Numbered from the stretch's first letter, positions 10,876 to 38,495 are shown. The stretch: DNA of 64,000 nucleotides from Prasinococcaceae sp. CCMP 1430 (GCA_013416795.1 RQSC01000028.1:404534-468533), one strand, 5' to 3'. Program-made: numbers and translations. The notes: a model not told the origin generated them from the sequence alone.

Positions 10876-12552
10876 ATGCCGCAGCACCACCACCACCAGC
10901 ACCAGCAGGTGGCGGTGGGCGGGGGCGGCCAGGGCGAGTCGGCGCACAAGAACTCGCAGAACCTGATGCCGGACATCGCGCGCGTCGAGCCCGCCGCCGC
11001 CGAGCAGTTCAAGCGCGCCTGGCGGCGGCTCGAGGAGCGGCTGCACGCGGCCACGCCGGCCGTGCGCGGCGTGCGCAGCCCGCCCGCGTTCGTGGTGCCG
11101 CGCGAGATCGTGTGGCTCAACGGCGCCCCCGGCTCGGGGAAGGGCACCAACTCGGCCTTCATCATGCAGGCGCGCGGCTTCACCAGGGCGCCCATCGAGA
11201 TGAGCCACCTGCTGCGCAAGAACCCCGACGCGCAGGACAAGGTCCGCAAGGGCCAGCTGCTCGACGACGAGGACGTGCTCGACTACCTGCTGGAGGCGCT
11301 CTTCGCGCCGAGGGAGGAGCGCGCGGCCGACGCCGCCTCGGGCATGCTGCCCGACGACGGCGGCGAGGCCGGCGTGATCATCGACGGCTTCCCGCGCACG
11401 AGCACGCAGGTGGACCACATCAAGCTGCTGCACGAGAAGCTCGAGGAGCTGCACCAGGAGGCCGTCGCGGCCGACCCGCTGAACGTGCACTTCCCGCGGC
11501 CGATCTTCCGCATCCTGGTGCTGTACGTGAGCGAGGAGGAGAGCGTGCGGCGGCAGCTCGAGCGCGGGCGCAAGGCGGAGTACCACCGCGGGATCCTCAA
11601 GGACGCCAAGCTGGTGCCCGAGGACGGCGGCGCGCCGGGCGGCAGCGCCGCGCTCGGCGTGGAGTACTCGCAGCCGCGCGCCACCGACATGTCGGAGGAG
11701 GCGGCGCGCAAGCGCTACTGCATCTTCCGCGAGCACTACCACACGCTGCTGCGCCTGCGGCGGTACTTCCACTTCACCATGATCAACGCCATGGGCTCGC
11801 TCGCGCAGTGCGAGGCGCAGATCGCGCGCGAGCTGCGCTACCAGTCCAAGCTGGAGCTGCACGCCGAGGTGTACGACCGCGTGACGCGCATCCCGCTGGC
11901 GCAGAGCGTGGTGGAGAACGCGCGCTCGCAGCTGCTCAGCCGCCTCAACAGCTACCGCCACACGCACGCCGAGACCTTCAGCACGGTCATCCGCACCATC
12001 CAGGCGGAGGTGGTGCCCCACATCAAGCGCTGCGCGATCGCGGGCGTCGCCGTGTGGGAGACGACCGACCCGCTGTTCGACGCGCACGACGGCGAGGCCA
12101 TCGACATGGTGCTCGACGTGCTGTCGGAGCGCGGGTACGGGGTGACCTACCGGGAGGTGGAGACGTACATCCCCGACCGCGTGGACCTGGCGACCGGAGA
12201 GATCGCCACGCGCGCGGAGAAGCACCACCTGTTCCGCGTGACCTTCGAGCGGCCCAAGATCCGCACGCACGCGGCGCCGGCGCCCACCGAGGAGGTCCCG
12301 CTGGAGCTGCTGCGCACGGACGAGAGGCTGATGGACGCGTCGGCCAAGATGGTGGTGACGGCGGTGCCGCAGTACGGCGACGAGCAGGAAGGGGGGGGCG
12401 CCCAGGGTGGGGGGGCGCGCAGAGGCAGCGCCCCCGGCGAGCCGTCGTCGTTGGAGGGGGGCGAGGAGGGGAGCAGGGGCGGCGGCGGGGCCGGGTTCCC
12501 TGGCGGCGGCGGCCCTCCCCCGGCGCCGCCGGCCAGGCCGACGCAGCAATAG
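10876..12552 (+). CDS. Adenylate kinase-like protein (long, PVC/protist-type family), intronless
   Basis: IVWLNGAPGSGKGTN P-loop, IIDGFPRT motif; 558-aa single ORF with almost all third positions G/C. Confidence 0.85.
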   Translation: MPQHHHHQHQQVAVGGGGQGESAHKNSQNLMPDIARVEPAAAEQFKRAWRRLEERLHAATPAVRGVRSPPAFVVPREIVWLNGAPGSGKGTNSAFIMQARGFTRAPIEMSHLLRKNPDAQDKVRKGQLLDDEDVLDYLLEALFAPREERAADAASGMLPDDGGEAGVIIDGFPRTSTQVDHIKLLHEKLEELHQEAVAADPLNVHFPRPIFRILVLYVSEEESVRRQLERGRKAEYHRGILKDAKLVPEDGGAPGGSAALGVEYSQPRATDMSEEAARKRYCIFREHYHTLLRLRRYFHFTMINAMGSLAQCEAQIARELRYQSKLELHAEVYDRVTRIPLAQSVVENARSQLLSRLNSYRHTHAETFSTVIRTIQAEVVPHIKRCAIAGVAVWETTDPLFDAHDGEAIDMVLDVLSERGYGVTYREVETYIPDRVDLATGEIATRAEKHHLFRVTFERPKIRTHAAPAPTEEVPLELLRTDERLMDASAKMVVTAVPQYGDEQEGGGAQGGGARRGSAPGEPSSLEGGEEGSRGGGGAGFPGGGGPPPAPPARPTQQ

Positions 12553-24069: not shown

Positions 24070-27000
24070 ATGGGCGGATCCAGAAAACGCAAGAAAGGCA
24101 AGTCGAAAAAGGGCCAAACGGCGAGCCGTGGCCGTGAAGGAGTAGCTGAAGGCGATGCCGGCGACGCCGCCGTGGCCGCGTGTCTTCGCGATGAGGTCAC
24201 GCCCGCAATCAGTGCATCCTCCGCGTGCGGTTCGGAGCATGTGGCAACGTCGCCAGCCCCTTCAGCCAGCAAATCGCGCCCTCATGAAACAGAGCAATCC
24301 GACGCAGTTGGCAGCGCAGATTGCCGCCTCTCTCCGGGACGACCGGGCGCTGCTCACACCGTGACTGGTGCTCGGGCAGCTGGCGAAAGGGGTTCGCAGG
24401 ACATGATTCTTGCTGGCGTCCAAGCTCTTGGCCAGCAGCAAGACTTCGCACAGGCCGCCGCATCGCCCGCTCGCACGACCCTCGCAACCGACGTTGATGA
24501 TTCTTTGGGCGGTGTACAACTTGAACAAGCAGAGGCGTGCTGCCCTGCGGCCCCCGAGACGTATGCATTGCCGCCCCAGGGACATTCCGAGTCGGCACTG
24601 CCTCAACGGGGTGCGATGAAACCTGAGCGTGCTGTGACTGCTGGCGCGCTGGTGTGGCTCAGGCGGCCCGTGGGTGCGGAGGGTCCGTGGGTGGCCGCGC
24701 AGGTGCTTGCGACTGGCGAGAACGGCGCCATTGTGGCCAGCATCGTTGAGGAGGATGGCGGGGATGGCACCGCGGAGGAGGTTTACAGCGATGGATGGGA
24801 GCTGCGCGAGCCCCTCTTCTCCAAACGCAATGCGGACAGAAACAGCGCCGGGTGTGAGGACTGCTGCGAGCTGCACTACCTCAACGAGCCCTCGATCTTG
24901 GAAAACCTACAGTCACGCGCAGCCGCCGGTCAGATCTACACGCGAGCCGGCGAGATTCTCATAGCGATTAACCCGTATCGTGAACTCGACATCTACGATG
25001 CTGAGACGGTGCTGACGTACATGGATTCGGAGGACTGCGCTACCCAGCTGAGGCAGACCGCGGCTCTGCCGCCGCACGTGTTTCAGACCGCGATGGCCGC
25101 CTATCGCGCCATGGCACGCGACGAGCGTGCCCAGTGCATACTCGTCTCTGGCGAGTCTGGTGCAGGGAAGACTGAGACTACAAAAAAGGTCATGATCTTT
25201 TTGTCCAGCGTCGCCGCGGGAGCGAGTTTGCACCGCGGGCAAGACGCGGCCGTGGGCGACGTCTGCGCTCGGATACTGGCCACCAACCCCGTCTTGGAAG
25301 CGTTTGGCAACGCCAAGACTGTACGCAATGACAACTCAAGCCGCTTTGGCAAGTACATCGAGCTGCGCTTCAATCGCTCGGGCTACCTCACAGGTGGCTA
25401 CATTCGCACGTACTTGTTGGAGCGCTCTCGCGTAGTACGGATCAACTCACCGGAGCGCACATACCACATTTTTTACCAGCTGTGCGCAGCGGGCGTGTGC
25501 AGCCCCGCCCAGTCGGCCGCGGGAGGGTTCGACATGTTGCGTCAGTCTGAATGCACAGAGCTCAGAGACGTTGATGACGCGCGCGAGTTTGCAGCGACCC
25601 GCGAGGCAATGGAAACACTCGGCATTGACGAGCAAAGCGCGGCCGAGGCTTTCGGCATCCTGGCGGCTATCCTGCACCTCGGCAACGTGTCCTTCTCGCG
25701 CCACGTGGACGCAGCCGAAGAAAGTGCTCTCGACGTTGACGATGGTGCGTTGGCACTCGGTACAGGGTAGTGCGTCTAACGGCTGACAATCGCGTGCATT
25801 GATTGATCGGTGAAGGCAGCCCTGCCGTGCGTAGAGGCTTTTGCTGACCTGGCACACACGCGCACCTGGACCATTCCGCGCCCGCTCACCGACGGACGCC
25901 ACCGCGCACGAACACACTTTCACCGGGCATTTCGAACGGACGGGGAAACTGCGGATGACTGCCAATGTCCCGGTCTCTGCGCATTGGTACTCTTACACGC
26001 GCGCTGTGTGTACGTGACGTGACGTCAATTGTCGCCACACAGTCGCGCAGGCAGCCCTGCGCGCAGCGGCGTCGCACCTCGGGTGCGACCAGAGCGCGCT
26101 CAGAGCTGCACTGTCGACCCGAACCATCTACGCTGCTGGGGAGTCCTTTGTGAAGGAGCTCAATCCAGATGATGCCCGCTCAAGCAGGGAGGCACTGTGC
26201 AAGGTGCTCTACAGCAAGCTCTTTGGCTGGATCGTGTTACAGCTCAATCATGCGCTTCGTCGCGACGTCGCACCCGAGGCCGGCGCCGGCAGCGCGGCGT
26301 CCCTCGACAGTCTCGCTGCCGCAGAGCACGACCGGACATCGATCGGTATTCTCGACATCTACGGCTTCGAATGGTTTGACACATGCAACTCGTTCGAGCA
26401 GCTGTGTATCAATTGGGCGAACGAGCGCCTGCAGCAATTTTTCAACGCATTCGTCTTCAAAACCCAGCAGGCCGAGTACGAGGCGGAAGGGATTGAGTGG
26501 AGCTTCGTGACTTTCCGTGACAATGACGACGTCCTCGACGCGATAGAGCAGAACATGGTGCCATTGCTAGACGACCAATGCCGCATGCCCTCCGGGTCTG
26601 ACAGCGGCTATGTCGCGTCTCTTCGGGCCGCCCTGCTGCCTGCCAATCGATTTCGCGAGTCGCGCCGAGACCCGGACAGCACATTCACGGTCGTGCACTT
26701 CGCCGGAGCTGTCGAGTACACTGCGAAGGGATTTTGCGAGAAGAACAAAGAGGTGACGTGATGTGCGCGGCGTCCGGCTTGCGTCGCACGCATTGGTTGT
26801 CCGGGCTGCCTGGATTGCGTGTGCTCACGGCGATGGCATTTACACCCCTCATGCCTACTGACGCCATGCGCGTGCGATGTCTCTGGTCGCACGCGCGCGC
26901 GCGCGCGCGCTCTCTCGCCCGCGCAGTTCGTCGTCCCCGAGCACGCCAAGCTCATGCAAGAGTCATCGACCAAGCTGCTCACGCTTTTATTTGCACCTGC

Positions 27001-29287
27001 GTCGGGATGCCTTGGCAGGGAGCCCGACGTCGGCGATGGCAGCAAAACAGCCGGCGGCGGCTCGAGGCCAGCCACACACCATCAGCCCTCCACCAAATTC
27101 ACAAGCGTCGGCCTCTCGTTCCGGACTCAGCTTCGCGACTTGATGTCGGCGCTCGAGCGCACGGACCCGCACTTCGTGCGTTGCATCAAACCTAATAGCG
27201 AGGCATCGCCAGAGCATTTTGACTCGCGGCTCGTGCTTGAGCAGCTGCGCAGCGGTGGCGTCAGCGAGGCCGTGCGCGTCATGCAGGCAGGCTTCCCGGC
27301 GAGGCGCACGTATGAAGATTTTGCGTCGCGCTATCGGGTACTTGTGACCGGAGCAGCAGCCGCAGCACCAAACGAGGTCGCGAAAGGGGTATGCGAGGCA
27401 GTGGTACTCACGCTCGGCTTAAGCACGGCCGTACAGATGGGCAAGACAAAAATATTTCTGCGGGCAGGCCACCTGTCAATCTTGGAGACCACGCTCAGGG
27501 AGCTGCAGCGCGAGGCAGTTACTTGCATCCAAGCCTGTGCCAGGCGGGCCATGCACAGACGTGCATTCTCCGCGCTACGAGGAGCCACCATAGCCACACA
27601 GCGAAGATGGCGCGGCGTGCTCGCGCGGCGTGCGGCGCAGGCCCTGCGCGAGGAACGCGCGGTGCTACTGCTTGCTACGTGGTGGAAATTCCGGCGAAGT
27701 GTGCGACGAAAGCACGCCGCAGTGACCATCCAGATGGCATGGCGGGCCATATCGCTCCGCGGCCAGTACCTGCGCATGCGCGCCGCCGTTCGTACTCTGC
27801 AGGCCGCGAGTCGCGCCACCGCCGCTCGACGGACAGCTCACGACCTGCGTGCGTCGACGCGCGAGGCAGCAAAGCTGGCTGCCGAGGCAAAGGGGCTCAG
27901 ACAGGAGCTCAGCGATGCGAGAGGCCGCAGCAATCAGTTGATGCGCGAGGTGGCAGCCCTGACGGCGGCACTCGAAGCCGCAAGCGCGGAATCCGCGGAG
28001 GTGAGTCACGCGATTGATACTGAGCGCCAGCGGACAAATCAGGCCACGGAGCGCATCGAGGTGCTCGCAGCGCAGAACGCCGAGCTTCTGCGCGGGATCG
28101 AGGATGCCAATGCGCGTGCCGAGTTGGCTGCCCGAGCAGCTGCGAATGCCGCAACAGCGGCGCTGGAAGCGGCCGACGCCGCGATCCGTGAAGGTGACGA
28201 CAGCAGCGACAGCAGCGGTGAGGACGGTGATCCCAAAGCCTGCGGGAATGCTGCGAGTGAAGGTTCAGATTCAGCGAGCACGCAGCAGGATGCTGACACA
28301 TGCGCCTTGAGCGTGACGCGGGCTCGAACGACTGTGCACACGTCCACGGCTGAGAGCGCCGAGGAGGACGGTAGCACACGTGCGCTCATGGCCTGGCGTT
28401 CTGCTGCCAGGTCGTCCAAGGTAATGGGATGGCTGATGAAAGACAAGATGCAACAGCACGTTTCAGACATCGCACGCCTTCGGTGGAGGCTCGCATACCG
28501 CTTCGTGGTGCAGCCCTTCCGCACGCGGCGAGTGGTTGACGCACTTGCCCACGCATCTACACACGAGTGTGTGGACGCTTCCCGAGACCGACGCTGCGCT
28601 GAAAGTCCTCCGGGCGCCACTACCACTGCCGTCGCGCTCGGTTCGTCAATCGTCGCGGACGAATCGGCGCCGTCAAGGGACATCTCCGCATCTGCGCTCG
28701 AATTGCACGGGAAGCAGATCGGCGAGGCACTACCCGGTATCGCGACGACAAGAGAGAGCTCGAAACCGCCAAGCGCAGCGAGAGCACTGCGGGATGGTGG
28801 ACCGGTTGAGACGTATGCTTCGCCACAGCGGCCAGAGGCGCTCTCAGAGGACGACGCGTTGGGCACGCGCCTTAATAGCCCGCCCGCCGCGGAGAACTCA
28901 GGTGTGTCGCGAGGTACTGCAACCTGCACACCCTTGGCACCATTGGTGGAGACGACATGCACGGACAGCTCTGAGGGACAGGGAAGGCAATTGAAGTCGC
29001 CCAGGGTGGATGCCGCTGGGAACAAGCCTCCGGAGGCCCAGCGCACTTTCCAATCGCAGGAGGAGAGCGCTCCCAATAGGACCCGCGGAGACGCGGAACG
29101 GGTGCCAGGCAGTGCGGGCTTGGACGAAGGACACAAGGCCGAGCCCGAACACGTCCAGGACGGAGGGATGGGGTTCATAAGCTCCAGCGGGTCAGAGGAC
29201 GCCGACTCAACCGCCAGCGAAGATGATTTTGCAAGAGGGGCATTCACGAGTGCTTCCGAATGGTACACCTTCGGCCCGCGGGCGTAG
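24070..29287 (+). CDS. Myosin with class XI-like motor, ~5 IQ motifs, coiled coil and non-DIL low-complexity tail; exons 24070-25744, 26043-26752, 26927-29287
   Basis: GESGAGKT, NDNSSRFGK, LDIYGFE, KNKE|FVVPEH, HFVRCIKPN; GT-AG introns keep frame. Confidence 0.93.
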
Positions 29288-29614: not shown

Positions 29615-29978
29615 TTAGCCCGTGTTGCGCTGGAGGTGTGCGGTCATTAGGCAGCAGAGTAGAATGCAAGGGTCAGCACGATGCGTCCTCTGGTAGTGCT
29701 GCCAGAGCGTGTGCGCTTGCACGGGGCGTGCAGCTCACCATGCCCGCCGCGATGCCGTTAATTGCCACCAGAAGCGCATCACGCAGTTGCTGGTCATCGG
29801 GCGTCAGCCTCAGTCTACGCAGAATCTCCACCTGCAGCATGTTGATAGGCGTGAGATAGGCCTCACGATTTTCAATAAGCCGCCGAAGGACCTTGTTGTT
29901 TTCGCCGAGCTTGTGGTGGCCAGTGATCTGCAGCAGCGTGTCGCGTGTCTCTTCCATCTGTCGGCGCAGCTCGACGCC
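29615..29978 (-). pseudogene. PPC: Orphan last two exons of a bacterial-type PEP carboxylase (29978-29739, 29629-29615)
   Basis: GVELRRQMEETRDTLLQITG...NREAYLTPINMLQVEILRRLR...ALLVAINGIAAGM|RNTG*; intron GTGAGC...CCAG; no upstream PEPC coding sequence found in the window. Confidence 0.8.
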
Positions 29979-30218
29979 CGTGAGCAATGCAGGTGATGAG
30001 TGGAAGAAAATCGCGGAATGGCCTCATGACTCATGCTAGGAAGCCGGTTTACAGTCAAGGCCCGCGCACGCGGAATTCCGACCCCGCTCAGTCCAACCTG
30101 CGCGCATTCGAACTCGTGGAGCGCGCCGCTGAAAGTGCGTCACGTTTTTGACACTTCTTTGGGCCGCCACAGTCGACCTGTTGAACAGTCGCAGCGCGCC
30201 ACCACTGTCAATGGAGAG

Positions 30219-33200
30219 TCACGCGTCGACAGTGCCGGGGGTTACGGCGCGTTGAATGCGCGCGCGGGCCTTCGAGTGCCTCAGGGCGACTTCCTCGGGC
30301 GACAGCTGTCGCAGGTGCTGGCGAGACACTCGGACGCTGGCGCTCCTTGGTCGAGAGGTGCCAACACCGTCGCCACCGTTCCTAGTGGAGGCTGCCGCTA
30401 GTTCGTCTTGCAAGCTGTCAAGCTCGCTGACAAGGCTGCGATGCACCTTGCTCGGCGTCGACGTAGAACCCACGAGCAGCGAAGGCGAGCCACCTGGTAG
30501 ATGAGTGCCAGCGGACTCGCGAGTGTGCGTCGCTGATATGAGCGCGAGGCAGCGCAAGACAGCACCGCCTATGTCCTCCGGGTGCAGGCCAGCAAGGCGT
30601 TTCGCGAGAGCATCCTCAACCTCAGGCAGAGACGGCGCCCCGGCATTCTCCGCCTCGGCCTCAATCGCTGCGGCCGCGGCACGGGCAGTCTCCTCGCGGG
30701 CTTCAAGAGCTTCTACTCGAGCTTCAAGGTCCGCGACCATCGCCGTGCGCATCTGCTGGTCCGCTCTCAAGCGAGGCGATGCTCTCGTCATGGTACCAGT
30801 CTGTAGGGCGCAAGCAGCCGCTTCGGCACCAGCCTGCGCCACGAGCGCACGGCCCGCGCTGTCGTCGTCGCCTCGATTCCTGGCAAGGGCGCGCTCCTGC
30901 GCCCACTTGCTCGCCTGCGCCTGGACGATGGAGAGGGCCCGATCGCTCTGGGCGGCAATGTCCTCGTGCAATAGTGTCTGTCGCTCAAGGTGGAGGCGCA
31001 GAGGCCGGAGCTTCTCCTCAGTGTCGCGGCGCTCGTCCGCAAATCGTCGTGCTCGGGCGCGCTCGGTCTCGACAGCCTGCGATCGCTTCATGGCAATCAG
31101 AACAGCTTCAAGGTCACGCAGAAGCAGCGCCTTGTGGCGCTCGGCATCTAGCGGACGCGGCCTGGAGGGCGTGCTCGAGGGTGTCGTTGCCGATGATTGC
31201 TGGCAGACTGGAGCAGATGTCGGCCGCTTGGAGGCTGGCGATAACTTGCGAAGATGTCCATGCTCGGATGAGTCAGCCGTTTCCAAACCAGCCCGACGCA
31301 TGGTCGCTTGTTGGTGTCTGATAGTGCGCTGCAGGTTTCTGACCTCGCGCTCGCGCTCCTCCGCAGCGCGACGAGCGGCTGCCGCTTCGTCGCGCGCAGC
31401 GGTTGCCTGGGCCTCCGCACGCTCTCCGGCCTCCTGCATCCGGCGCTTCAGGGAGGACGCTTCATTGCGGAGGCGCTGGGTTTCCGCGCGCATGGCTGCC
31501 ACGTGCGCGTCGTCCGCAGCCTTGGACTTCTGTGCACGGATGCGCTCCTTGCGCGCAACCTCACGCTGCAGGGCAGACAATTGCGCCTTCACCTTGCGAA
31601 TTTTCTCCTGGTAGACCAGCCTCATTCTCCTGATTTCGCCGTCATCGCGATCCGCTTCTCGAGAATCCAGGCTCTGAAGGGCGCCGCGTAGGCCGTCGAC
31701 CTCCGCTACGCGATCAGCCATCTCTGTCCTAAGGCCGTCACTGCGCCCCGACCGGCTCGTAAGACTCCCTTCCGTAGTAGTAGCTCCGCTACCGAGCGCG
31801 CTGATGCGCTCCTCCTTCTCCTTGATTTGACGTTGCAGCGTGCGCAGCCGACGGCCCATCTCAGCCCTGTCGAGCGCGTGTGCAGCAGAGACACCGGCTG
31901 CGGCGTTTTGCGCCGCGGCCGCGGTCTTTTCCGCTGTCGCGACCTTGGCCTGCAGCATCCGCTTCTCTTCTTCCACCTGCGCGACGCGGCTCTCGAGCTC
32001 GTCGACAGCCACTACAGCCGCCGCTGCCTCAGTCGCGGCAACCTGCAAATGCTCAGCGACCGATGGCATCTTTGATACCTCTTGCGTAGCTCCAAGCGGA
32101 ATAGCAGTCGTCGCGATTGCATCGTCAAAGTTGCGCATCCCGCTCTCGTCCAGCACAGACGCGTGATGCATAGAGTACGCATCGGCGTCGGTGTCGTCTT
32201 CGAGGGCCGGCGACGTGAGGAGAGCATGAATGCGCTCCGCAGCTGCATTCGTCCCAACCACCTCGGCCTGGATCGAAGCTCGCAGGAACGAGGCGTCCTC
32301 GTCCGCCACCACCACCCCATGCGAAGGAGACACAGTCGCGCAACCTCGTAGGGAGGCACATTGCTCGAGCAGCATCTTGTTCTCACTGCGTAGCGCAGCG
32401 TTAGCGCTCTTGAGTGACGAGATCGCCTCCACCTTGGAGGCGAAAATGCGCTCGTCTCGTTCGAGATCTTCCAACGCGTTCTTCAGGCTATCCTCAGCTT
32501 GCCGAGCTTCGGCGTCGCGAGCTACGAGCGCAACGCGTAGCGCCGTCGACGCATCTTCTTCGAATGCGGCAACACTGACGTCGCCGTCCACTTCGGCATG
32601 TGCAACCTCGCCCGCATCCGTCAGGGACCGACGAAGCATTGCAAGGCGCTCAGAGTCTTCGTTGATGGCCTCCCCGTCAAGTGCGGCGAGGACGTGGGAT
32701 ATCCCGCGTCTGTGCTGCTCGTAGCGCTCTCGGAGAGCATCGCGTTCTGCGATGGCACCGTCGCGCGCGCGCATCGCCTCAGTACGACGGCCCTCGAGGG
32801 CTTTGCATCGCGTCTCCAAGCGCTTGAGCCGATCTTCGAGCTTCTCACGCTCGTCTGCCCACTTGGATGCAGCGGCAGCCGCCCTGTTCTCCGCTGCCAC
32901 GAGGCTCACTCGTTGTGCCTCCAGCGCACGCTCAGCCGCGAGCAGCTCGGGGTCCCTATCTCGTGTCGAGGCGCGCGGGCCAGCAGTAGAGGCGCCTACG
33001 CCGACCATTTTCTGCACACTACGCCGCGCGATGGACGCCGCGCACGACAGCGCGAGCGACGCCCGCATGCGTTCGACCTCCTGGCGGCTTGAGGTGTTGA
33101 CTATTGGCATATTGATGATGCGGCGCGTGCGCCCGGCGTACTTGAGCGTGCTGAGCGTTTCTTCGAGCGTCAAATCGTGGGGGCCAACGCACGCGATCAT

Positions 33201-35185
33201 GCACGTATGCGCATTGCTCCCTAGAGAGTCCTGGAGCATGCGCGTGAGGCGACTGTCACGGTAAGGTATGTGTGCAAGGCTTGTGGATCTCCTGCCCTTG
33301 CCCTTGGAGGTGCTCAGTGCGGATATGACGTTGGACAACGCCAGAAGCCCGGAATTGATCTTGATGGCTTCCTGGAATCGCATGCCTGTGGTCTGCGAGC
33401 GCTTGTTGCGCTCGGATCCCGCCAGGTCCACCATGTGCAGCTTCGAGAGACGGCAGTGATGGTGTTCGCCCGGGGGCGACGCCTCGACAAGTACTGTGAA
33501 GATTGCGTGCGATCGCGAGCTGCGCGTGTTGGCGAGGGTGCTTCCAGTCGCACGCCGTGCCGCACCGCGCTCGAGGCACCACATGAGGTCGCTGAAGCTG
33601 TTGCATATCTCCTCCTGCGCGCCGGCGACGTATATGCCGCCCGCCGATGTCTCACGAATCGAGATTGCTGTCCCCTTGTGCCGGTCGCTCTGGTGGAGCC
33701 TCGCACTGGCAGACCATGCGCTGGCGCGTCGTGGCGTAGACGATGCCTCCGCGTTCGTGCTGGCTGGGCTGCCATTGTCGAGGAGGTCGAAGAGCTCCTC
33801 GTTGTATACCTCCAAAAACGTGCACCTGACCTCGACGCGCTCCCCAGCCGCTCGTCTCTCCTCCACGAGCTCAAAGAGGTCACCGATCGCTCGCGGCAGC
33901 ACACCAACATTTCGCAGGACTTGCTCGCCCTCCTGACTGCCAGAAGCGGCCGTGCCGTCCGCGGCGGCAGCAGCCTTTGCCGCTGCAGCGGCCTCGACAG
34001 CCCCACCGGTCCCTATGAAAGTGCGCGTGGCATCGGCAGTGCAGTGTCAGCCTGTGTGGTGTGCGGGTCGAGCCAGACGAGGCAATCCCAGAGGCCACCG
34101 CAAAAAGACTTGCACTCGCGCGCCGCGCGCGTTGCTTACCCTGTACCATGAGTGCGCGATTGAGGGCCACAGGCCATTTCCGTCAGCTACGTGCACAGCA
34201 CACACACACACACACACACACAAGAAGGCACAGTCTCGCGCGCGCACGCGCACGCGCGCCCCCCAGCCAGTGGGCGGGCGTGCACACACAAGTGCGCATG
34301 GTCACACGCGCGCACGCAAGCAAGCAACCAACCAAAGCCACACACACACAAGACAACGCCATGGTGCGCACACATTTGCACTGACGCGCCGCGCGCGTGC
34401 GCCGTACCCTGCGGATGGCACATGAGCGCACGGTTGAGAGCGAACGTCCAGGTCCGTCAGTCACGTGCAAAGCAAACACACACACTACAACGCACCACAA
34501 CCACACGCGCAGTCACACAAACGAACGCGCTCGCCGGACAGACCCCTGTCGTCCCGTTTCTTCCAATGCCACAGCCATATTTCGCTCTTCTGTTCACAGC
34601 GAGAATACCTGCACCGACCCCGAAGCCCCCCCCCGCCCCCCCCGCGCGCTCCCCAACTGTCGGCGCGTGCGCGCGCGCGTCATCGTACATTGTGTATGTC
34701 TTGCCACTGCCGGTCTGCCCATATGCGAGGCACGTAGCATTGTACCCATCCGCGCAGAGCTTCACGAGCGGCGCGACGCACGCGTCGTAGACCTCACTTT
34801 GCGATGCATCCGCTCCGAAGACATCGTCGAATTCAAAAGCCTTCGTCGGCCCCACGCGTACGAGCCTCTGCTCGGGCAGGGCGCGTACGGCAGCACGGCG
34901 TGAACGCGCCTCGATGCCGAGTGGGGGACGCACCCGCACTGCGACGCGCACAGCAACACCAGCCGCCGCCGCATCAGCTGCAATATCCGTCGATGACGCG
35001 CTTGATTGTGATTGCGTGGCCGCGCAGTCAGCCCCTGGCACGCTGTGCGCACTCCGCCCGCGAAGGCCGTCCAGCGCCGACGAGCGCCTCGCGTCAGCCA
35101 GACTGCTGCCGCATGCAGTTCGAGCGACCGCAGTCCCACTCTGTGGGAGTTGCGTGGGCATACCGTGCGGCTTCTCCTTTGCCAT
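30219..35185 (-). CDS. Kinesin-4-like (KIF4/KIF7/KIF27/FRA1 group); exons 35185-34689, 34408 (1 nt), 34140 (1 nt), 34012-30219
   Basis: VAVRVRP, FEFDDVF, AYGQTGSGKTYTMGT (after splicing), SSRSHAIF, MVDLAGSER, INSGLLALSNVISAL, HIPYRDSRLTRMLQDSLG; long coiled-coil stalk. Confidence 0.92.
34199..34222 (+). repeat. (CA)n microsatellite, i.e. (TG)n on the kinesin sense strand, in the intron between the two micro-exons
   Basis: About 11 CA units. Confidence 0.9.
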
Positions 35186-36364: not shown

Positions 36365-38495
36365 ATGGAAGTGCTGCTGTCGCTAGTCGACCGCTGTGAG
36401 CGGCGCCCGCCTGAGCCCCCAGTGCTCGTGAATTTTGGACGCCACACACGCCCCCTGGAGGACCCGCTGCTGCGGGTCGCATACGGGGGCGTGTTGCAAG
36501 CGACGCTCAGCGAGGGCGACGTCGAGGGCGACACGCCCAAGGAGGATGACTGGGTGTTCCTGCATTTCACGGCCAGGAAAATCGGCGCGCTGGACGCTCA
36601 TGCAGAGGGCTCGCTCGCCTCAGGCGTCCCGTCAGTGCCATTTCTGAGCACCAGAGCTGAGTACGGCGGCAACGGCCGCCCTTTCCGCTTCGTGCTTGGC
36701 AAGTCAAAGATTATGAAGTCGTGGGAGGCTGTCGTAAGCCATATGCGCGTTGGCGAGCGCAAACTCATCCAGGTGCGCCCTGAGTATCACTACTTCGACG
36801 GGAGCGGCAATTTCACGCCTCCGCGCGGCAGCGGGGTGGAACCGTCGACGGTCGTCGAGTTCGACCTCGAGCTCGCCGACATTCAGAAAGTGCTGCCGCT
36901 CGACGACGAGCACGAGAGGATGAAGCAGTATCTTGCGGAGGGCGAGGGCTGGGAAACCCCAGGTGACATGTTTGAGGTCGACCTGGAGCTCGAGGGCCAG
37001 GTGATCGAGGGAAAGTGCGAGGAGGCTGGCGGCCCACCGTTCGTGTCGCACGCGGATCTGTGCGTCACCGTGGGGCGCGGCGCGCTACCGCCGGCCGTTG
37101 ACGAGTGCGTGCGCTCCATGACGCTGAACGAGGTGTCTCGCTTCACGCTGTTTGGCGGCAGTGCCGCAGGCCCCGCGACAGAGCTGGTGCCAGTGCCGGT
37201 GGGTGCTGCCGAGGTCGTGTACGATATCAAGTTGCTCGGCATGACACATATCAGGGACGTGATGGGCGACGGGCAAGTTATAAAGCGGCGGAGGAGGCAG
37301 GGCAAGGGCCAATTCCCTGTGGACTGTCCGATCCACGACAGCATCGTGCGCTTTTTCTGTCACTCTGTGCGTGCCCTGCCTGCCGGAGGTGCCGAGCCCA
37401 TCACGCTCCACGAGGGCGGGCACGCACTGATCGACACGCACACTGGCCAGGGCAGGCTGCCCGAGATGGTGGACACCTGCTTGCGCATCATGGTGCCGGA
37501 CGAGCGCAGCACGCTCACCTGCTCCCCCGCAACCTACCCGTTTGAGGACTGGCAGGGCTCCGACTCCTTCCCAGCCATTGACAAATCCAAGATTCCTGGG
37601 GGCGCTTCAATCGAGTTGGACCTCGAACTGGAATCGTTCGAGCGCTACAAGTACATGACTGAGCAGGCGCTCGATGAGCGACTGAAGGAAGCAAAGACCC
37701 AACGCGAGATGGGCAACAAGGTAGGACGCCGGCTCAGATTTTTCGCCCACGTGCGCACGACCATCTCAGCTCTTGTTGCAAAATAGAGGTACCAATGTGT
37801 GCAGCGCGGTGTCCTGACACACCCCTGGCCCGCGCACAGCTATTCCGACAAGGGAAGTACGAGCTCGCCAAGGACAAGTACAAGCTGGTCCTCGGCATGC
37901 TTGAGCAGGCTCGACCTGAGACTTTGGAGGAATGGAACATGAATGATGCAGAGAAGATCCCCACTTTGCTCAACTACGCCAACGTGTGTTCCAAGCTCGG
38001 TGATCAGCGCGAGGCAATCAAGTACTGCGACAAGCTGCTCCGCTTTGACGAGCAAAACGTCAAGGGTTTGTATCGGCGCGGCATGTGCTATCTGCTGCTA
38101 GATGACCATGAGAATGCTCAGGAGAACTTTGAGGCCATGCGTGACGCAGGAGGCGAGACATACACCGCGGATGTCGAGGCTGCCTTCGACAAGCTTCAGC
38201 GGTCGCGCGACGATGCTAAATTGCGTGAGAAGCGTGAGTACAAGGCCATGTTCGACAAGAAGAAGGAGATCGAGGTACGCTTGCACATTTCGCACTCTCG
38301 CGACACTGTGAGCGAGTGAGTTCATGCTTTTGCTTTGGAGCAAGGAAGTGCGAGGCTGCTTGCTGACCTTTGTTGCGTGACGCTCGTTCTTTGCGTTCTC
38401 GCGTGTGCACCGCGCACCCACCCGCATGTCCGGTGACTCCGCATCCGCAGGCGGCTAAAGCCAGGACGGAGAAGCAGGCTCTTAACATGAAGTAG
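36365..38495 (+). CDS. PAS1: PASTICCINO1-like multi-FKBP + TPR peptidyl-prolyl isomerase; exons 36365-37720, 37840-38274, 38451-38495
   Basis: STRAEYGGNGRPFRFVLGKSKIM and GKGQFPVDCPIHDS match PAS1-type FKBPs; TPR helices (LLNYANVCSKLG, KGLYRRGMCY); phase-0 introns. Confidence 0.8.

What the first reader, a model, noticed from the sequence alone, without database searches (positions are those of the whole stretch)
34013..34688. Two consecutive single-nucleotide exons rebuild the P-loop region of a kinesin-4
Seen: on the minus strand exon 1 ends ...AAG ACA TAC ACA AT|GTACGA (donor 34688) and the large downstream exon starts TAG|GG ACC (34012). Joining them directly is out of frame by 2 nt. Inside the 676-nt interval are two sites of the form CAG-G-GT: ccgCAG|G|GTACGG (G = 34408) and gtaCAG|G|GTAAGC (G = 34140). 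Each of the three resulting introns (280, 267, 127 nt) has its own CTGAC branch motif about 30-50 nt before its AG (34460-34456, 34186-34182, 34050-34046), matching other introns in this window. AT+G+G+GG ACC = ATG GGG ACC gives GQTGSGKTYT-M-G-T, the usual kinesin-4 sequence; including only one G stays out of frame. Established: a single-nucleotide internal exon is known in Arabidopsis APC11, and tiny micro-exons are routinely missed by annotation. Inference: tandem 1-nt exons would be an extreme splicing architecture, requiring ordered or recursive-like intron removal, and could gate kinesin expression because skipping either G frameshifts the mRNA. The (TG)-rich tracts in these introns are candidate enhancers.
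Basis: partly seen in the sequence, partly recalled or inferred. Interest (0 to 1): 0.92.

Follow-up and report, generated by a model that had tools for sequence, protein, structure and literature searches.

The report
Two one-base exons in a kinesin
In the green alga Prasinoderma coloniale, a cell-division motor gene seems to keep its reading frame only if two separate single-G "exons", 268 bases apart, are spliced into the message; that would be the first back-to-back pair of the smallest possible exons, but no RNA data could be checked here.

Summary
The window is Prasinoderma coloniale nuclear DNA. The gene is a kinesin-4, published as PRCOL_00000875.

Joining the P-loop exon (ends AT|GTACGA) directly to the large exon (TAG|GG ACC) misses the frame by 2 nt. 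The 676-nt interval holds exactly three CTGAC branch motifs. Each is followed by an AG-free run up to a YAG. It also holds exactly three GTA-type donors. Together these define introns of 280, 267 and 127 nt, separated by single Gs at 34408 and 34140.

It extends exon 1 by 74 nt to a GTGCAG donor. That extension crosses a hypervariable (CG)n/(G)n tract and is frameshifted in 12 of 20 independent environmental contigs. In those haplotypes no single GT-AG intron is in frame.

The two-G product reads TYTM-G-TGG. Glycine follows T/S-M in 212 of 216 homologues; the published Tyr occurs in none.

Intron 2 is a chimera: its 5' end resembles intron 3 and its 3' end resembles intron 1. This points to a 268-nt tandem duplication across a one-base exon.

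No transcript was available, so splicing remains inferred (about 0.6). One-base exons are known (APC11, VPS55, Fusarium CYP621A); I found no report of a tandem pair.

The parts
34689..35185 (-). Coding part of exon 1 of the kinesin-4 gene. The ATG is at 35185-35183. It encodes MAKEKPHG...GQTGSGKTYT and ends with AT, the first two bases of the Met codon.
   Evidence: Translation. Pfam Kinesin positions 33-91. Identical to the N-terminus of the published protein P0121.
34409..34688 (-). Proposed intron 1, 280 nt. 5' splice site GTACGA (GTGCGA in two contigs), branch motif CTGAC at 34460-34456, 3' splice site CGCAG.
   Evidence: The A/G polymorphism at 34686 keeps a purine at position +3.
34625..34650 (-). 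Hypervariable (CG)n/(G)n tract inside intron 1. Length alleles are 0, +2, -3, -9 and -10 nt relative to the window. The published CDS reads through it.
   Evidence: Alignment of 20 contigs. The ORF variants P0135, P0137 and P0143 are frameshifted.
34613..34614 (-). GT of the alternative donor TCG|GTGCAG used by the published model PRCOL_00000875. The exon would end at 34615, leaving one 602-nt intron.
   Evidence: The P0121 sequence mapped to the window.
34408..34408 (-). Proposed 1-nt exon G1, the third base of the Met codon of TYTM.
   Evidence: CGCAG|G|GTACGG. Invariant in 20 contigs.
34141..34407 (-). Proposed intron 2, 267 nt. 5' splice site GTACGG, (TG)n tract, branch motif CTGAC at 34186-34182, 3' splice site TACAG. 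It is a chimera: its 5' end resembles intron 3 and its 3' end resembles intron 1.
34140..34140 (-). Proposed 1-nt exon G2, the first base of the Gly codon that follows TYTM.
   Evidence: TACAG|G|GTAAGC. Invariant in all contigs that cover it.
34013..34139 (-). Proposed intron 3, 127 nt. 5' splice site GTAAGC, branch motif CTGAC at 34050-34046, 3' splice site CATAG.
30219..34012 (-). Exon 2. It starts GG ACC and encodes the rest of the motor domain, the coiled coil and the tail. The stop codon is at 30221-30219.
   Evidence: Translation. Pfam Kinesin positions 99-327 and KIF21A_4th. No indel or stop in up to 3789 nt in the other contigs.
34376..34534 (-). Copy 1 of the duplicated junction module: the 3' part of intron 1, then G1, then the 5' part of intron 2.
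   Evidence: BLAST gives 73% identity over 114 nt. Local alignment z 12.5 for the 3' parts and z 5.2 for the 5' parts. Register of 268 nt.
34110..34255 (-). Copy 2 of the duplicated junction module: the 3' part of intron 2, then G2, then the 5' part of intron 3.

Best explanation
The kinesin-4 pre-mRNA of Prasinoderma coloniale carries three ordinary GT-AG introns of 280, 267 and 127 nt at three neighbouring positions of the sequence AT^G^G^GG. Two single guanosines, at 34408 and 34140, are therefore internal exons. Removing all three introns gives ...ACA ATG GGG ACC..., which reads GQTGSGKTYT-M-G-TGG. This is the P-loop and alpha2 start typical of kinesin-4.

Each acceptor lies 1 nt from the next donor. 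The three introns therefore cannot all be committed to splicing at once and must be removed one after another. Any order gives the same product. After intron 1 is removed, for example, the donor reads AATG|GTACGG.

The second one-base exon and intron 2 probably arose from a 268-nt tandem duplication of a module made of an intron 3' end, a G, and an intron 5' end.

Shown here: the sequence anatomy, the frame arithmetic, the population variation, the residue conservation and the paralogy of the modules. Inferred: that the spliceosome uses these sites, the stepwise order of removal, and the duplication history.
For: 1. All motifs and coordinates are as described.
2. The interval contains exactly three branch-like motifs. 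All are CTGAC, and each is followed by an AG-free run to the predicted acceptor. The only three GTA-type donors sit at the predicted intron starts.
3. The same grammar is seen in other introns. The FKBP/TPR gene intron 37721-37839 has AAG|GTAGGA and a CTGAC 26 nt before the end of CACAG. Myosin intron 26753-26926 has a CTGAC 69 nt before the AG. The intron in the relative L005 fits too.
4. In 20 independent contigs of the locus the interval is 676, 678, 666 or 669 nt long. All of the frame-relevant length change sits in the (CG)n/(G)n tract that the published CDS reads through. That CDS is frameshifted in 12 of 20 contigs. In the 678-nt and 666-nt haplotypes no single GT-AG intron is in frame. 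The three-intron model is in frame in all of them.
5. Exon 2 has no indel or stop in up to 3789 nt in those same contigs. The variable tract therefore behaves like non-coding DNA inside an intact gene.
6. Of 216 homologues with the P-loop motif, 212 have Gly directly after T/S-M. The two-G model gives that Gly. The published model gives Tyr, which occurs in none.
7. The nearest environmental relative (77% identical before the junction) has no intron here. Its protein runs straight from TYTM to TGD, with no counterpart of the 25-residue published insertion.
8. One-base exons flanked by GT-AG introns are experimentally established in green plants and in a fungus. Their flanking introns are removed consecutively (PMC4674806, PMC8831610, PMC12940212).
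Against: - There is no RNA evidence. No transcript-derived protein spanning the junction exists in the searched collection, for lengths from about 85 to 2210 aa. The JGI scan found nothing.
- In the reference haplotype the published single-intron model is also in frame and uses a plausible GTGCAG donor.
- Donor sequences of the few confident introns in this window are degenerate (GTGCGT, GTGACG, GTAGGA). Donor strength therefore cannot rank the models.
- Other canonical paths are in frame in every haplotype class modelled. Some have one internal exon of 23-119 nt. Another uses a GTTGGG donor plus one G.
- Contigs differ by only about 1-2%, so the invariance of the splice elements has no statistical weight.
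- pN/pS in exon 2 is not clearly below 1 at this divergence.
- The immediate ancestor, with one fewer duplicated unit, would have been out of frame given today's exon 2 start. The history therefore needs an extra one-base change in the G run.
Confidence: 0.62

Rival explanations
1. The published gene model is right, at least for the reference haplotype. Exon 1 runs 74 nt further and encodes YDDARAHAPTVGERAGGAGGGFGVG. It ends at TCG|GTGCAG, or 6 nt later at CAG|GTATTC. One intron of about 600 nt is then removed, and the CAG-G-GT sites are inert relics of an intronic duplication.
For: It is in frame and stop-free in the window and in the 669-nt haplotype. It is the model in the published annotation, P0121. 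The insertion would fall in the loop after the P-loop helix, which is already expanded by 33 residues encoded in exon 2.
Against: It is frameshifted in 12 of 20 independent contigs, including the commonest environmental haplotype. That haplotype has 678 nt, 11 contigs and many Tara samples. Of the four length differences from the window in this tract, two are not multiples of three, whereas exon 2 has no indels. The model replaces a Gly found in 212 of 216 homologues with a Tyr found in none. The insertion has no counterpart in the nearest relative.
Confidence: 0.14
2. A different canonical path is used, with a larger internal exon. One example runs AT|GTACGA ... CGCAG| + 23 nt |GTCAGT ... TAG|GG. 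Others have internal exons of 26-119 nt. Another uses the donor ACA|GTTGGG plus a single one-base exon.
For: Eleven or twelve such paths from the first donor are in frame and stop-free in every haplotype class tested. The GTTGGG-plus-one-G path also holds in all of them.
Against: They must read through the GTACGG or GTAAGC donors and use GTCAGT, GTGTGC, GTTGTC or GTTGGG instead. They insert Arg/Cys/Val-rich peptides with no homology. They lose the conserved Gly. One such internal exon carries a SNP at 34389 in four contigs.
Confidence: 0.08
3. The same mRNA, ...ACAATG|GGGACC..., is produced by excision of one non-canonical intron spanning 34687-34014 (TA...TA). No one-base exons are involved.
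For: By sequence the product is identical to that of the three-intron model. This follows from direct reading. A junction read alone cannot tell the two apart.
Against: No spliceosomal intron class has TA-TA termini (established knowledge). This reading also leaves the three complete donor, CTGAC and AG sets unexplained.
Confidence: 0.03
4. The locus makes no full-length protein. It is either a young pseudogene or a gene whose transcripts are mostly frameshifted and degraded.
For: No transcript-derived protein was found. pN/pS in exon 2 is not clearly below 1.
Against: An open frame of 1275 codons is intact in all contigs. All motor motifs are present: GQTGSGKT, SSRSH and DLAGSE. The divergence is too low for pN/pS to be informative.
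Confidence: 0.06

Closest known systems
One-nucleotide exons of plant APC11 and VPS55 and of Fusarium CYP621A (PMC4674806, PMC8831610, PMC12940212)
   Same: A single base, flanked by two canonical GT-AG introns, is needed to keep the frame and restore a conserved residue. It is missed by genome annotation, which substitutes a wrong in-frame model. It occurs in the green lineage.
   Different: Here two such exons lie back to back, 268 nt apart, so the missing piece is supplied one base at a time. The introns are lineage-specific and young, since the nearest relative has none, whereas the plant cases are conserved across land plants. The published cases have RT-PCR or RNA-seq proof. This one has none yet.
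Recursive (ratchet-point) splicing with zero-nucleotide exons, as described for Drosophila Ubx and long vertebrate introns (from general knowledge, not checked here)
   Same: An acceptor lies directly next to a donor, so that one splicing step regenerates a 5' splice site and removal must be stepwise.
   Different: Recursive sites are AG|GT and leave nothing in the mRNA. They serve to remove very long introns. Here AG|G|GT leaves one coding base at each step, and the introns are short (127-280 nt).
Intron gain by tandem genomic duplication across an AGGT (PMC3265369, PMC4974935)
   Same: A local tandem duplication supplies a ready-made donor and acceptor. Intron 2 is a chimera of the 5' end of the downstream intron and the 3' end of the upstream one, as that model predicts.
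   Different: In the classical case the duplicated piece is exonic and is spliced out, leaving the mRNA unchanged. Here the duplicated piece is intron, G, intron. It adds one base to the mRNA, so a second one-base change in the exon 2 G run has to be assumed.
Introner elements of Micromonas, Aureococcus and other algae (from general knowledge, not checked here)
   Same: Related introns occur within one genome. Earlier unchecked notes of this scan report introner-like intron families in this alga.
   Different: No dispersed copies of these intron modules exist in the 64-kb window. No terminal repeats or target-site duplications were seen. The copies are local and tandem.

Membership tests
One-nucleotide internal exon (microexon of 1 nt) | A single base bounded upstream by a YAG acceptor and downstream by a GT donor, each belonging to a complete intron | tested here: met
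   CGCAG|G|GTACGG and TACAG|G|GTAAGC. Each flanking intron has its own donor, its own CTGAC and an AG-free run to the acceptor.
One-nucleotide internal exon (microexon of 1 nt) | Inclusion of the base is required for the reading frame and restores a conserved residue | tested here: met
   Joining with neither G or with one G is out of frame. Joining with both gives M-G-T. Gly follows T/S-M in 212 of 216 homologues.
One-nucleotide internal exon (microexon of 1 nt) | Transcript evidence (cDNA or RNA-seq) that the base is spliced in | not testable with these tools
   No raw reads are accessible. No transcript-derived protein covers the junction. The JGI contig scan was empty.
One-nucleotide internal exon (microexon of 1 nt) | Conservation of the microexon and its splice sites in orthologues | tested here: inconclusive
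   The sites are invariant in 20 contigs, but at only about 1-2% divergence. The only closer relative found (77% identity) is intronless at this site.
Kinesin-4 (KIF4 / KIN-4 / KIF21 group) | Kinesin motor domain with P-loop, switch I (SSRSH) and switch II (DLAGSE) | tested here: met
   Pfam PF00225 scores 1e-19 on exon 1 and 3e-70 on exon 2. The motifs are read.
Kinesin-4 (KIF4 / KIN-4 / KIF21 group) | Family-specific tail domain, and best matches to named kinesin-4 proteins | tested here: met
   PF25764 KIF21A_4th at 9e-10. The top named hits are KIN-4A/C and KIF4/KIF21 proteins.
Introner element | Many dispersed, near-identical intron copies in unrelated genes | tested here: not met
   The modules are found only at this locus within the 64-kb window.
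Intron created by tandem duplication | The new intron is a chimera whose 5' end copies sequence downstream of a junction and whose 3' end copies sequence upstream of it, in tandem register | tested here: met
   The intron 2 5' end resembles the intron 3 5' end (z 5.2). The intron 2 3' end resembles the intron 1 3' end (z 12.5, 73% over 114 nt). The register is 268 nt.
Recursive splice site (zero-nt exon) | Acceptor and donor directly juxtaposed (AG|GT), leaving no base in the mRNA | tested here: not met
   One base separates the AG from the GT at both sites.

The most novel reading that the evidence does not exclude
Two consecutive one-nucleotide exons are constitutively spliced into an essential motor-protein mRNA. 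The second one-base exon and a whole new intron were created in one step by a 268-nt tandem duplication spanning an existing 3' splice site, G, 5' splice site junction. That step would have been followed, or preceded, by a one-base change in the neighbouring G run. This would be a natural example of a duplication creating an intron and an exon at once. It would also show a spliceosome working purely by intron definition, forced to remove three introns strictly one after another.
Probability: 0.4. Interest if true: 0.8.

Novelty: new variant of a known kind. Interest (0 to 1): 0.62.

Why it matters
One-base exons are the lower limit of exon size. Only a handful are documented: APC11 and VPS55 in plants, and CYP621A in Fusarium.

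A tandem pair would have several consequences.
- It would show that the spliceosome can place an acceptor and a donor 1 nt apart twice in a row. It would give a compact natural substrate (676 nt) for studying ordered intron removal and intron definition.
- It would give a dated example of how new introns and exons arise. The introns are young, since they are absent from the nearest relative, and the duplication footprint is still readable.
- On the practical side, the published protein model carries a spurious 25-residue insertion immediately after the P-loop motif. Frame-breaking natural variants can be used to expose such annotation errors.

Tried and rejected
1. Transcript evidence. Three protein searches covered candidate lengths of 85-2210 aa. 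They returned only genomic read-through ORFs of this species. The cluster listings showed no named transcript-derived member; two members of the exon 2 cluster were not listed. One JGI DNA scan with an exon 2 anchor found nothing.
2. Closer relatives in JGI metagenomes. The closest were other algae at 57% identity or less. L049 turned out to be an unrelated AT-rich organism.
3. An intron consensus for this genome.
   - An automatic enumeration of GT-AG pairs between coding-like ORFs was far too noisy.
   - Only three or four introns in the window are confident, and their donors are degenerate. No splice-site scoring matrix could be built, and the models could not be ranked by donor strength.
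   - Exact look-up of window ORFs to retrieve more annotated proteins failed for 8 of 10.
4. Dispersed introner family. No other copies were found in the window.
5. RNA structure or known RNA in the interval. The fold z-score is 0.1 and there is no Rfam match.
6. Selection test on the splice elements. One of about 20 SNPs hits the 44 signal positions, against 1.3 expected. The test has no power.
7. One enumeration script had a frame bug from a tail length of 31. It was discarded and redone.
8. The idea that each intron insertion added one G (three introns, three extra Gs relative to the relative's TM-TG) was rejected. The wider family has TM-G-S/T-G, so the relative more likely lost a codon.

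Full report
**What is there**

On the minus strand the P-loop exon of a kinesin gene ends ...GGC AAG ACA TAC ACA AT at 34689 and is followed by GTACGA. The next long open frame starts GG ACC GGT after CATAG, at 34012.
- CGCAG|G|GTACGG with the G at 34408, and TACAG|G|GTAAGC with the G at 34140.
- CTGAC at 34460-34456, 34186-34182 and 34050-34046.
- Introns of 280, 267 and 127 nt.

Exon 1 matches Pfam Kinesin positions 33-91. Exon 2 matches positions 99-327 and also the KIF21A_4th domain. The best named relatives are KIN-4, KIF4 and KIF21 proteins. A cluster look-up identifies the organism and gene: EukProt EP00793 Prasinoderma coloniale, PRCOL_00000875-RA, 1454 aa (P0121).

Joining AT directly to GG ACC is out of frame, and so is using one G only. 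In this haplotype, however, exon 1 can be read on without a stop. Eleven single GT-AG introns are then in frame. The published model uses one of them. Its exon 1 is extended by 74 nt, encodes YDDARAHAPTVGERAGGAGGGFGVG, and ends at the donor TCG|GTGCAG, with the exon end at 34615. The real question is therefore which of the two models is spliced.

**Population test**

I fetched 20 independent assemblies of this locus, about 99% identical, from Tara Oceans and other ENA metagenomes and from Logan assemblies.
- The interval between the two exons is 676 nt in the window and four contigs, 678 nt in eleven, 666 nt in one and 669 nt in one.
- All frame-relevant length change lies in a (CG)n/(G)n tract at 34625-34650. 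This tract sits inside the published exon extension.
- The published CDS is frameshifted in 12 of 20 contigs. These include the commonest environmental haplotype, which was assembled independently from many samples.
- In the 678-nt and 666-nt haplotypes no single GT-AG intron is in frame.
- The same contigs show no indel and no stop in up to 3789 nt of exon 2.

The tract therefore evolves like non-coding DNA within an otherwise intact gene. The three-intron model is unaffected by any of these variants. Its splice elements are invariant except for an A/G change at position +3 of the first donor. At this divergence that invariance carries no statistical weight.

**Protein test**

- The two-G model gives GQTGSGKTYTM-G-TGG. 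Green-algal kinesin-4s read TM-G-S-G.
- The published model gives TYTM-Y.
- Homology predicts both missing bases to be G (ATG, then GGG), and both candidate one-base exons are G.
- The nearest relative found is an environmental contig, 77% identical over the 92 residues before the junction. It has no intron here and runs TYTM-TGD-AEHPGVMPRAI. The introns are therefore lineage-specific.
- That relative's next intron uses the same grammar: GTGCGC at the donor, and CTGAC about 45 nt before the end of CACAG.

**Splice-signal anatomy**

- The 676-nt interval contains only three CT[AG]A[CT] motifs, and all are CTGAC.
- For each, the first AG downstream is the predicted acceptor. The AG-free runs put the acceptor 52, 46 and 38 nt from the start of the motif.
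- Across the window only 17-28% of CTGAC motifs have runs that long.
- The only three GTA-type donors in the interval are the three predicted intron starts.
- Confident introns elsewhere in the window also carry CTGAC: the FKBP/TPR intron 37721-37839 and the myosin intron 26753-26926. Their donors are degenerate (GTAGGA, GTGACG, GTGCGT), so donor strength cannot rank the models.

**Other paths**

With lax rules (any GT, a YAG acceptor, a CTRAY motif within 85 nt), several other paths are in frame in every haplotype class modelled:
- paths with one internal exon of 23-119 nt;
- a path using a GTTGGG donor plus one G.

They require reading through GTACGG or GTAAGC, they use poor donors, and they lose the conserved Gly.

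Formally the same mRNA could also arise from a single TA...TA excision spanning 34687-34014. No spliceosomal intron class is known with such ends. This equivalence probably explains why transcript aligners and annotation pipelines would miss the true structure.

**Origin**

- The last 120 nt of introns 1 and 2 are homologous (73% over 114 nt; z 12.5).
- The first 30 nt of introns 2 and 3 are homologous (z 5.2).
- The other end pairs are not significantly similar.
- The repeated unit is therefore an intron 3' end, a G, and an intron 5' end, in a 268-nt register. Intron 2 is a chimera.
- This is the footprint expected from a tandem duplication across a splice junction (compare PMC3265369 and PMC4974935).
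- The modules have no other copy in the window, so they are not a dispersed introner.
- One puzzle remains. Each unit adds one base to the mRNA. The immediate ancestor would have been in frame only with one more G at the start of exon 2. This is inference only.

**Mechanism**

An acceptor and the next donor are 1 nt apart. Factors that recognise the 3' splice site of one intron would therefore overlap those that recognise the 5' splice site of the next. I infer stepwise removal, as reported for introns flanking plant microexons (PMC8831610).

I found nothing for or against either idea. The interval has no unusual fold (z 0.1) and no Rfam match.

**What is missing**

There is no RNA evidence. 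The protein collection holds no transcript-derived product spanning the junction. The JGI scans gave nothing useful. RNA-seq data for this strain exist (PMC7455551, PMC11884799) but could not be queried here.

**Comparison and verdict**

One-base exons are established in APC11 and VPS55 of land plants and in Fusarium CYP621A. The Fusarium paper of 2026 calls its case the second example known. Literature searches found no report of two consecutive one-base exons.

I rate the three-intron, two-G model at about 0.62. The published model is at about 0.14. The remainder is spread over other microexon paths, a non-canonical excision, and a non-productive gene. If confirmed, this is a new and extreme variant of a known kind. 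It would also correct the published gene model.

Noticed in passing
window 29676-30023 (-): A 116-codon open frame directly behind the kinesin stop matches only the last 86 positions of Pfam PEPcase (830-915 of 919, E 2e-19). The same fragment is called on the Tara contig L001. It looks like an orphan C-terminal piece of PEP carboxylase, as another first-stage note on this window also says.
   Followed up: partly
window 34625-34650 (-): A (CG)n/(G)n tract has five length alleles (0, +2, -3, -9, -10 nt) among 20 environmental contigs that are otherwise about 99% identical. One allele replaces (CG)n with (TG)n. It could serve as a strain marker for Prasinoderma coloniale populations.
   Followed up: yes
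window 24616-29284 (+): The published myosin model PRCOL_00000876 (P0270, 879 aa) removes 27302-27802 as an intron. Yet the frame 26762-29284 is open throughout, and the Myosin_head match lies in it. The model also stops long before the end of that open frame. It looks truncated or mis-spliced.
   Followed up: partly
window 10876-12552 (+): A 558-codon ORF with an adenylate-kinase-like domain has GC3 of 0.98-0.99. The other genes of the window have 0.62-0.83. Codon bias is extreme for one gene only.
   Followed up: no
whole window: Third-position GC of the kinesin (0.69) and the myosin (0.68) is well below the genome-wide 85.7% reported for this alga (PMC11884799). Window GC is 55-73%, against 69.8% for the genome. 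This may be a low-GC region of the genome.
   Followed up: no
L005:700-1084: A Tara contig from an unidentified relative (77% identical in the kinesin N-terminus) lacks the three introns. It has another intron further on, with donor GTGCGC and a CTGAC before CACAG. The CTGAC branch grammar is therefore shared beyond P. coloniale.
   Followed up: partly
window 25745-25790 (+): The myosin intron that starts at ATG|GTGCGT contains GGTACAG-G-GTAGTG 21 nt inside it. This shares an 11-mer (GGTACAGGGTA) with the second kinesin one-base-exon site. It may be chance.
   Followed up: no
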